Assembly: GCF_963853765.1 (NCBI RefSeq)
Contig: NC_088862.1
Coordinates: forward strand, 930,001 to 994,000
Source of the DNA: Magallana gigas
Taxonomy: Eukaryota
Reading direction: 5' to 3'
DNA: 64,000 nucleotides
Shown: positions 51,800 through 51,977 of the stretch, in pieces
Numbering within the stretch: position 1 is the stretch's first letter
How the letters are laid out: each line of letters starts with the position of its first letter
Position numbers and translations under genes: made by a program
Notes under the pieces: model-generated
What the model saw: the letters and a program-made list of their open reading frames with translations, nothing else
The model's database searches: none
What the model was told of the DNA's origin: nothing

Positions 51800-51977
51800 G
51801 AGTCACTTGGTCTCCTTGATTTGGCAGCTTCAGACTGCCATTTCTCGGACTTGGACTAGTCGGGCAACCATCTCGATTGAGACCACTTGTGACAACCCAC
51901 TTAGCCTCCGGGTGCTATTTGGACCCGGCCGGCTGACCTCCTCGTGGTGAGAGTTGGATTCAAACTAACAGCTGGTC
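51800..51977 (+). ncRNA. HDV-like self-cleaving ribozyme of an R2 5' end (P1 degenerate)
   Basis: P2 CCGGCTG(51929-35)/CAGCTGG(51969-75); P3 ACC/GGT with L3 TCCTCGT; P1-3' GAGAGTT; P1.1 GG; J4/2 CTAA with catalytic-position C51965. GAGAGTT is complementary to 28S GACTCTC. Confidence 0.75.

What the first reader, a model, noticed from the sequence alone, without database searches (positions are those of the whole stretch)
51800..51977. HDV-like ribozyme fold hidden in apparently non-coding DNA
The nested double-pseudoknot elements are in the right order: P2 CCGGCTG/CAGCTGG (7 bp, one G-U), P3 ACC/GGT around L3 TCCTCGT, P1-3' GAGAGTT, P1.1 GG pairing with CC of L3, and J4/2 CTAA with the catalytic-position C. 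P4 is reduced to ~7 nt with no evident stem, as in minimal HDV-like ribozymes. GAGAGTT is complementary to 28S GACTCTC, 13 nt upstream of the R2 site, a known way R2 ribozymes build P1. A decayed version, AACTGATGAGTCACTTGG (51793-51810; cf. 28S AACTATGACTCTCTTAAGG), would supply P1-5' GAGTCAC with 5 of 7 pairs and predict cleavage 5' of G51800. The ~120-nt J1/2 has its own stems (TGGTCTC/GAGACCA, TGGCAG/CTGCCA, CCGGGT/ACCCGG). Caveat: GTCAC can alternatively pair with GTGAC at 51889. This copy is probably impaired, but it points to an active P4-less mollusc R2 ribozyme.
Basis: partly seen in the sequence, partly recalled or inferred. Interest (0 to 1): 0.8.

Follow-up and report, generated by a model that had tools for sequence, protein, structure and literature searches.

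The report
Relic R2 retrotransposon ribozyme in oyster
The stretch is the decayed self-cleaving (HDV-like) ribozyme at the front of a short, gene-less R2 retrotransposon relic lying near the oyster's ribosomal RNA genes; it is real, but it belongs to an already well-described kind and this copy is probably dead.

Summary
The core at 51927-51977 (P2, P3/L3, P1 3' strand, P1.1, J4/2 with C51965, P2 3' strand) is a genuine R2-type HDV-like ribozyme core.

It holds CCUCCUCGUGG, cited as the most conserved R2 ribozyme motif. It opens an ORF-less, roughly 650-700 bp R2-derived element that ends against a 28S +1 relic. Two paralogs on the same chromosome carry GACTCT..AAGG, a 28S -13..-1 relic, directly upstream of P2. 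Three metagenomic relatives share the core, and their P2 helices are entirely different in sequence but still pair.

The P1 3' strand is complementary to 28S -13..-7, which predicts cleavage at -13. That arrangement is already known for Nasonia and Tribolium R2.

- The proposed P1 5' strand in this copy (GAGTCAC, 5 of 7 pairs) is at chance level.
- The TGGCAG/CTGCCA stem in "J1/2" is the hairpin that forms P4 in the nearest relative, so the missing P4 is a derived loss.
- No active parent was found in the assembly or in one DNA run.

Long J1/2, P4-less cores and 28S-supplied P1 are all published for R2. Verdict: a new member of a known kind, a likely inactive relic, of modest interest.

The parts
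51740..51790 (+). Relic of 28S from about +9 to +59 past the R2 site. It is the 3' flank of the R2-like relic upstream, not part of the ribozyme.
   Evidence: It matches the oyster's own 28S at 82% by BLAST. The local alignment has shuffle P<0.001. True 28S RNA reads lie on it, with loose ends reading ...GACTCTCTTAAGGTAGCC.
51793..51810 (+). Possible decayed 28S -19..-1.
   Evidence: Against 28S -19..-4 it matches 13 of 15 plus one insertion, shuffle P 0.016. As a P1 strand it makes only 5 of 7 pairs, which is chance level. In the minimum-free-energy fold it pairs with GTGAC at 51889 instead.
51811..51926 (+). Spacer, which would be J1/2 if 51800-51806 is P1. It is unique in the assembly and holds the hairpin 51819-51839, homologous to P4 of relative L030.
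   Evidence: No other copy exists in the genome, and it is absent from paralogs L002 and L003. The hairpin is 20 of 21 identical to L030 1983-2003, shuffle P<0.001. The hairpin's flanks are not significantly alike.
51927..51935 (+). P2 5' strand: GG plus CCGGCUG.
   Evidence: It pairs with 51969-51977. There are compensatory changes against L030, and L031 and L032 have different helices at the same place.
51936..51948 (+). P3 (ACC/GGU) around L3 (UCCUCGU). The stretch contains CCUCCUCGUGG.
   Evidence: It aligns to the P3/L3 of Rfam drz-agam-1. The motif is cited as the most conserved R2 ribozyme sequence (PMC5035012). It has a single exact site in the window and, with its GG spacing, is the only R2-type site in the genome.
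51949..51957 (+). P1 3' strand GAGAGUU, then the P1.1 GG.
   Evidence: It is complementary to 28S GACUCUC at -13..-7, with a G-U at the first pair. Paralogs have GAGAGTC with GACTCT upstream.
51958..51964 (+). P4 position reduced to AUUCAAA, with no stem.
   Evidence: The same 7 nt occur in all three oyster copies. Relatives have 33-50 nt between P1.1 and J4/2, each with a stem.
51965..51968 (+). J4/2 CUAA, with the catalytic-position C51965.
   Evidence: It aligns to CuaA of drz-agam-1. CUAA or CUGA sits immediately before the P2 3' strand in every relative.
51969..51977 (+). P2 3' strand: CAGCUGG plus UC.
51978..52629 (+). Body and 3' end of the ORF-less R2-derived element (SIDE-like). It is GC-rich from 52000 to 52500. 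A 28S-derived piece lies at 52460-52510. Homology to the paralogs ends at about 52579.
   Evidence: It is 84-86% identical to L002 and L003. Only short ORFs of at most 88 aa on either strand were listed, and they were not searched. The 28S -80..-30 piece has shuffle P<0.001. An RNA-library contig covers 51938-52544 with 7 differences.
52630..52675 (+). Relic of 28S +1..+45, forming the 3' junction at the R2 site.
   Evidence: The sequence ...catatacga|tagccaaaggtcttctcatctaattag aligns to 28S +2..+45 with shuffle P<0.001.

Best explanation
51927-51977 is the catalytic core of an R2-type HDV-like self-cleaving ribozyme. It sits at the 5' end of a short, ORF-less R2 derivative resembling the SIDEs (short internally deleted elements) of Drosophila.

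The copy lies in a graveyard of R2 and 28S relics about 0.93-0.98 Mb from the rDNA array on the same chromosome.

In the working ancestor the element sat in the R2 site of a 28S gene and was transcribed as part of the rRNA precursor. The element's GAGAGU(C/U) paired with 28S GACUCUC (-13..-7) to form P1. P2, P3/L3, P1.1 and J4/2 completed the double pseudoknot. The RNA then cut itself 5' of G-13 and kept 13 nt of 28S at its 5' end.

Shown here: the core, its position in an R2-derived element, P2 covariation, and the complementarity to 28S -13.

Inferred: cleavage itself; that the P4-less core ever worked; and that this copy is now inactive. The reasons for the last point are that its P1 5' strand is degraded, it is not in a 28S gene, and its 5' spacer can fold otherwise.
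For: 1. The core elements are in canonical order and align to Rfam drz-agam-1 across P2, P3, L3, P1', P1.1, J4/2 and P2'.
2. CCUCCUCGUGG is present. Kojima et al. 2016 name it the most conserved R2 ribozyme sequence.
3. Context points to R2. Homology with paralogs L002 and L003 starts exactly at P2. In those copies GACTCT..AAGG lies directly upstream, and the element ends ...tcaa|tagccaaatg, which is 28S +1. The window copy ends against a 28S +1..+45 relic.
4. The metagenome scan for the core gave three relatives:
   - L030 sits directly behind a 28S relic.
   - L032 is an ORF-less element of about 1.2 kb abutting pristine 28S +1..+57.
   - L031 has a perfect GACUCUC/GAGAGUC P1 and scores 35.2 bits (E 9e-4) on the HDV-F-prausnitzii model.
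5. P2 differs in every lineage yet pairs, next to CURA: CCGGCUG/CAGCUGG, CCUGCAA/UUGCGGG, UGUGGU/ACCACA and CACUGC/GCAGUG.
6. A 28S-supplied P1 with -13 cleavage, P1-P1' separations of 23 to over 700 nt, and P4 regions too short to fold are all documented for R2 ribozymes (PMC3774820).
Against: - No Rfam family reaches its gathering score. The drz-agam-1 hit alone is not significant.
- P1 cannot be shown to covary, because the scan pattern fixed the P1 3' strand.
- In this copy the P1 5' strand is at chance level, and the GACTCT of L002 and L003 is not significant as 28S homology on its own.
- L002 and L003 have a 3-nt deletion in L3, so only one copy in the genome has an intact core.
- No autonomous partner or rDNA-inserted copy was found.
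- All three relatives have a P4, so activity of the P4-less core is unproven.
Confidence: 0.85

Rival explanations
1. This copy is still a working ribozyme. It would use the decayed 28S-like GAGUCAC (51800-51806) or another upstream 7-mer as P1, and process a transcript of this locus.
For: The core (L3, P3, P1.1, J4/2, P2) is intact in this copy only. An RNA-library contig 98.8% identical covers 51938-52544. Eickbush et al. report that about a quarter of R2 ribozymes tolerate 1-2 mismatches at the top of P1.
Against: - GAGUCAC has two internal mismatches and is at chance level. Seventeen 7-mers in the 629 nt upstream pair 6 of 7, and one pairs 7 of 7, which is also chance level.
- The minimum-free-energy fold sequesters GUCAC and the P2 5' strand in other helices.
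- The locus is not in a 28S gene.
- A contig cannot show a 5' end, and DNA may be present in that library.
- No reads were laid on the core in the raw RNA run sampled, of which about 1 read in 100 was read.
Confidence: 0.07
2. The core is real, but 51793-51926 is neither a 28S flank nor a J1/2. It would be the decayed 3' half of a second, P4-bearing ribozyme copy, joined upstream by template jump, partial duplication or recombination. The reader's 'P1 5' strand' would then be a decayed P1 3' strand.
For: The hairpin 51819-51839 is 20 of 21 identical to the P4 hairpin of L030 and follows a ...TGAG..TTGG string, as P4 follows GGTGAGAGTTGG in L030. R2 reverse transcriptase makes template jumps in vivo (PMC3414825).
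Against: Outside the hairpin the flanks are not significantly alike (P about 0.35-0.41). The 28S reading of 51793-51808 scores better (P 0.016 against 0.35).
Confidence: 0.3
3. It is a chance resemblance to an HDV-like fold in non-coding DNA.
For: The Rfam hit is below threshold (E 2.6), and short helices are easy to find.
Against: The position at the 5' end of an element flanked by R2-site 28S sequence, the exact conserved 11-mer, and P2 covariation across four lineages argue against it. The joint shuffle probability is about 1e-8 to 1e-7.
Confidence: 0.02

Closest known systems
R2 retrotransposon HDV-like ribozymes with 28S-supplied P1, notably the -13 cleavers of Nasonia vitripennis and Tribolium 'B' (Eickbush, Burke & Eickbush 2013, PMC3774820)
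   Same: It sits at the 5' end of an element in the 28S R2 site. The P1 3' strand is complementary to 28S -13..-7. It has the CCUCCUCGUGG active-site string and a CUAA J4/2. J1/2 is variable or long and P4 is dispensable, both as described for R2.
   Different: The host is an oyster, and no mollusc R2 ribozyme turned up in the papers read here. The copy lies outside rDNA and is decayed. Cleavage was not tested. Its nearest relatives have a P4 and it does not.
R2 SIDEs, the short internally deleted elements of Drosophila (Eickbush & Eickbush 2012, PMC3414825)
   Same: It is a short element with no long ORF, made of an R2 5' ribozyme region joined to an R2 3' end, and inserted at the R2 site (28S +1 flank).
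   Different: No autonomous partner with the same 3' end was found in this genome. The body also carries a 28S-derived piece (52460-52510). All copies lie in rDNA-proximal relic DNA rather than in rRNA genes.
Rfam drz-agam-1 (RF01787) and HDV-F-prausnitzii (RF02682), HDV-like ribozyme families
   Same: The nested P2/P3/L3/J4/2 layout is the same, and the ACCUCCUCGUGGU core is near-identical.
   Different: Scores are below the gathering thresholds: 17.5 against 37 bits for the window, and 35.2 against 44 for relative L031. The P1 5' strand and P4 are missing from the window match.
R2-1_CGi (formerly R2NS-1_CGi), reported as the first mollusc R2, from Crassostrea gigas (Kojima et al. 2016, PMC5035012)
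   Same: It is an R2 in an oyster, with a copy adjacent to 28S.

Membership tests
HDV-like self-cleaving ribozyme | P2 helix enclosing P3/L3, the P1 3' strand, P4 and J4/2 | tested here: met
   There are 7-9 bp in the window. Three compensatory pairs are seen against L030, and L031 and L032 have different helices at the same place. Register control: 93% of cells paired against 18-59% when slid.
HDV-like self-cleaving ribozyme | 3-bp P3 closing a 7-nt L3 with the conserved C and G positions, and P1.1 (GG with CC of L3) | tested here: met
   ACC/UCCUCGU/GGU followed seven nt later by GG aligns to the drz-agam-1 consensus. It is invariant in all relatives, so there is no covariation to count.
HDV-like self-cleaving ribozyme | Catalytic C at the start of J4/2, directly before the P2 3' strand | tested here: met
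   C51965 lies in CUAA. CUAA or CUGA sits 0-2 nt before the P2 3' strand in all lineages.
HDV-like self-cleaving ribozyme | P1: about 7 bp between the first nucleotides after the cleavage site and the strand after P3 | tested here: inconclusive
   The window copy makes only 5 of 7 pairs, at chance level. It is met in paralogs L002 and L003 (GACTCT, 6 of 7) and in L031 (7 of 7), and with authentic 28S -13..-7.
HDV-like self-cleaving ribozyme | P4 stem | tested here: not met
   Only AUUCAAA lies between P1.1 and J4/2. [quoted passage not shown]
HDV-like self-cleaving ribozyme | Self-cleavage in Mg2+ | not testable with these tools
   This needs a co-transcriptional cleavage assay.
R2 retrotransposon (5' ribozyme region) | Element inserted at the 28S R2 site (TTAAGG|TAGCC), with the ribozyme at its 5' end | tested here: met
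   The 3' junctions read |tagccaaagg (window) and |tagccaaatg (L002). The 5' junction in L002 and L003 reads gactct..aagg|P2. L030 lies behind a 28S relic and L032 abuts pristine 28S.
R2 retrotransposon (5' ribozyme region) | Single ORF with zinc finger/Myb, reverse transcriptase and endonuclease | tested here: not met
   Only short ORFs of at most 88 aa on either strand were listed in 51900-52640, and they were not searched. The element is non-autonomous.
R2 SIDE (non-autonomous R2) | R2 ribozyme joined to an R2 3' end shared with an autonomous R2 that supplies the protein | tested here: inconclusive
   The ribozyme and an R2-site 3' junction are present. No autonomous element with this 3' end is in the assembly or in the DNA contigs of one run.

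The most novel reading that the evidence does not exclude
The P4-less core with a 28S -13 P1 was a working ribozyme of a mollusc non-autonomous R2 (a SIDE) that was mobilised at least twice. The window copy and the L002/L003 ancestor have different 5' flanks, which is the basis for 'twice'. The odd placement of the P4 hairpin upstream of P2, and the alternation of 28S downstream and upstream scraps between R2 relics, would then record in vivo template jumps by the R2 reverse transcriptase.
Probability: 0.2. Interest if true: 0.45.

Novelty: new member of a known kind. Interest (0 to 1): 0.3.

Why it matters
The finding adds an oyster example to the known spread of R2 HDV-like ribozymes. It also suggests that SIDE-like non-autonomous R2 elements exist outside Drosophila.

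The scan brought in three related ribozymes from unnamed organisms. One sits in pristine 28S and looks live. Together they show how one active-site string is kept while P2, P4 and J1/2 change freely.

It does not open a new question. The -13 cleavage, long J1/2 and dispensable P4 are already published, and this copy is a relic.

Tried and rejected
- **Rfam.** At gathering thresholds over the whole window there were no hits.
- **More copies in the genome.** Searches used the element, the spacer, the 3' end and two core patterns. They found only the window copy, L002, L003 and the 'empty' paralogs. A second core-pattern hit, on C8, looks like chance.
- **Parent in reads.** One DNA run's contigs at 80% likeness show only the known forms, at about 20x each. 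A related species' RNA run (X18) laid nothing. Raw RNA reads hit only the 28S relic.
- **Viral-contig scan for the core.** Nothing found.
- **Covariance model R1.** It aligned L031 and L032 only over the invariant core, so their P2 pairs were read by script instead.
- **The spacer as a collinear partial copy of the element's own 5' region.** Not significant (P 0.26).
- **A 28S +1 relic at 52579-52602, and a 28S 5' flank at 47420-47449.** Neither is significant.
- **Own-genome search with L030's element part.** Nothing found.
- **ORFs in L031.** No Pfam family.
- **Two near-matches to CCTCCTCGTGG elsewhere in the window.** Unrelated.
- **Earlier notes of this scan.** None bear on this place.

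Full report
**The observation**

- P2 CCGGCTG (51929-51935) with CAGCTGG (51969-51975), extendable by GG/TC to 9 bp.
- P3 ACC/GGT around L3 TCCTCGT (51936-51948).
- P1 3' strand GAGAGTT (51949-51955), then P1.1 GG (51956-51957).
- Seven nucleotides, ATTCAAA, where P4 would be.
- J4/2 CTAA, with C51965.

The three stems in the upstream spacer and the competing GTCAC/GTGAC pairing all appear in the minimum-free-energy fold of 51793-51980 (-66.9 kcal/mol, z = -2.45). The organism's own 28S, read from the rDNA array at the start of the same chromosome, is ...gggagtaactatGACTCTCttaagg|tagccaaatgcc.... So GACTCTC does begin 13 nt before the R2 site and is complementary to GAGAGTT, with a G-U at the first pair.

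**Is it more than chance?**

Rfam gives nothing at gathering thresholds. A permissive scan of 2 kb gives one relevant but insignificant hit: drz-agam-1, 51929-51975, 17.5 bits against a gathering score of 37, E 2.6. It aligns P2, P3, L3, P1', P1.1, J4/2 and P2'.

The weight comes from context and relatives.
- The 11-mer CCTCCTCGTGG has a single exact site in the window. The two one-mismatch sites are unrelated.
- Kojima et al. 2016 call CCUCCUCGUGG the most conserved sequence of the R2 ribozyme, in both Drosophila and zebra finch R2 (PMC5035012).

**What the element is**

The window is C10:930001-994000 of a 564-Mb oyster assembly; the runs that hold the stretch are labelled oyster. An rDNA array lies at C10:0-59 kb.

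Two paralogs, L002 at C10:226 kb and L003 at C10:876 kb, match the window at 84-86% from exactly 51927, the first base of P2, to about 52579. In both, the bases directly upstream of P2 are ...aaaaGACTCTaagg|gccagctg, which I read as 28S -13..-1 with two bases lost. L002 ends ...ccatatcaa|tagccaaatgtcttg..., which is 28S +1 onward.

The window copy ends ...catatacga|tagccaaaggtcttctcatctaattag, a 28S +1..+45 relic (shuffle P<0.001). Only short ORFs of at most 88 aa on either strand were listed across the element.

It is therefore a short non-autonomous R2 derivative of the kind called a SIDE in Drosophila (PMC3414825). In L002 and L003 the P1 3' strand is GAGAGTC, a perfect partner for GACTCTC, but L3 has lost three bases. 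The window copy is the only one in the genome with an intact core.

**Relatives outside this genome**

One metagenome scan for ACCTCCTCGTGGTGAGAGTYGG returned three loci.

- **L030.** The core lies directly behind a 28S relic (Rfam LSU, 47.2 bits). P2 is CCUGCAA/UUGCGGG. P4 is a hairpin, UUUGGCAGCUUCAGGCUGCC. J4/2 is CUAA.
- **L031.** It has its own GACUCUC four bases before P2 (UGUGGU/ACCACA), a long P4, and a 35.2-bit match (E 9e-4) to the HDV-F-prausnitzii model that includes P1. It lies 1.6 kb upstream of an 18S gene only 85-87% like the oyster's, so it comes from a distant eukaryote.
- **L032.** It has P2 CACUGC/GCAGUG, a P4 region of about 50 nt and J4/2 CUAAC. It is an ORF-less element of about 1.2 kb whose 3' end abuts a pristine 28S +1..+57.

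P2 therefore has four unrelated sequences in four lineages, each pairing and each placed between P3 and a CURA motif. The shuffle probabilities are 0.019, 0.005, 0.06 and 0.006.

On the alignment of the oyster copies with L030, three P2 pairs change on both sides. Pairing is 93% in register, against 18-59% when the partners are slid. P3, L3, P1' and P1.1 are invariant by design of the scan, so they say nothing either way.

1. **The P1 5' strand.** The strand proposed for this copy, GAGTCAC (51800-51806), makes 5 of 7 pairs. In the 629 nt upstream there are 79 such 7-mers against 73 expected, so as a helix it is at chance level. Its reading as decayed 28S has modest support: 51793-51808 against 28S -19..-4 matches 13 of 15 plus one insertion, shuffle P 0.016.

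2. **The spacer 51811-51926.** It is unique in the assembly and absent from L002 and L003. Its TGGCAG/CTGCCA stem (51819-51839) is 20 of 21 identical to the P4 hairpin of L030 (P<0.001). The hairpin missing from the core's P4 position thus sits about 100 nt upstream of P2. The hairpin's flanks are not significantly alike. I cannot decide between a partial second ribozyme copy, a template jump and a rearrangement.

3. **The P4-less state.** All three outside relatives have a P4, so its loss is derived within the oyster lineage.

4. **An active parent.** None was found. The assembly has only these three copies. The contigs of one DNA run laid at 80% likeness show only the known forms, at about 20x each. 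An RNA-library contig of 607 nt (51938-52544, 7 differences) hints at transcription of an allele. A contig cannot show ends, though, and DNA may be present in that library.

**Local history**

Paralogous segments at C10:500 kb and 568 kb are collinear with the window on both sides at 87-97% identity. They carry AGAGGAA in place of 51791-52599. Whether that is an insertion here or a deletion there is open.

Upstream, 51740-51790 is a 28S +9..+59 relic that follows relics of a second R2-like lineage. A fuller copy of that lineage sits behind 28S ...gactctctt at C10:1018 kb and gives an RVT_1 hit. The neighbourhood is a set of R2 and 28S scraps in duplicated DNA near the rDNA.

**Mechanism**

Established by the literature: R2 is co-transcribed with 28S and freed by an HDV-like ribozyme. 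In many lineages the P1 5' strand is 28S sequence. Cleavage at -13 is demonstrated in Nasonia vitripennis and predicted in Tribolium B. P1 and P1' can be 23 to over 700 nt apart. Some R2 ribozymes have too few nucleotides for a P4 (PMC3774820).

Shown here: the core, its place in an R2-derived element, P2 covariation, and complementarity to 28S -13..-7.

Inferred:
- The ancestor cleaved 5' of G-13.
- The P4-less core may or may not have worked.
- This copy is inactive, because its P1 is degraded, it is not in a 28S gene, and alternative folds compete.

**Verdict**

This is a real but relic R2 HDV-like ribozyme, a new member of a known kind. Mollusc R2 was already reported (PMC5035012; PMC13188248). 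No description of its ribozyme turned up in the papers read, which is the small novelty.

Noticed in passing
L019-L025, e.g. G000:C1:34454661-34454732 (-): The genome holds a multi-copy set of 72-nt full-length HDV-like candidates, unrelated to R2. They score 22.5-27.6 bits on drz-agam-1, below the gathering score of 37. The copy at L019 has P1 CCTGCTC/GAGCAGG, P3 ACC/GGT, L3 TCCCCGT and J4/2 CTAAT. They probably belong to another retrotransposon family.
   Followed up: partly
L032 (JGI11643J12802_10256703), minus strand 1176..6: An ORF-less element of about 1.2 kb carries the same ribozyme core plus a P4, and its 3' end abuts a perfect 28S +1..+57. It looks like a live non-autonomous R2 in an unnamed organism. 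The contig ends before the 5' junction.
   Followed up: partly
L031 (JGI990J12352_1000123) 479-576 and 2084-3384: The same 22-nt core, with its own GACTCTC P1, lies 1.6 kb upstream of an 18S gene, so in an rDNA spacer. The host is a eukaryote whose 18S is only 85-87% like the oyster's.
   Followed up: partly
window 52460-52510: The element's body carries a 28S-derived piece matching about -80..-30 of the R2 site, including a perfect gtcaaagtgaagaaattcaa. L002 and L003 share it. Kojima et al. 2016 note 28S-derived sequence in the 3' UTR of some fish R2.
   Followed up: partly
window 47452-48931 and about 50850-51739; L012/L014 (C10:1018 kb): These are relics of a second R2-like lineage with a Myb-like KFKGVKF stretch. 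The fuller copy at C10:1018 kb follows 28S ...gactctctt and has an RVT_1 hit (E 9e-11). Its 5' end...ACCtcgacgattGGTgcttaag, might hold its own ribozyme, with GCTTAAG pairing to the junction CTTAAGC. That idea was not tested.
   Followed up: partly
window 51791-52599 vs L004/L017 (C10:500 kb) and L005/L018 (C10:568 kb): An 809-bp stretch holding the spacer and most of the element is replaced by AGAGGAA in two otherwise collinear paralogous segments. The same joined form appears in a DNA run's contigs.
   Followed up: partly
L040, G000:C10:8328138-8328243: An isolated 28S fragment of at least about 150 nt in non-rDNA context ends at ...aactatgac, which is position -11. That is within two bases of the predicted -13 cleavage site.
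   Followed up: no
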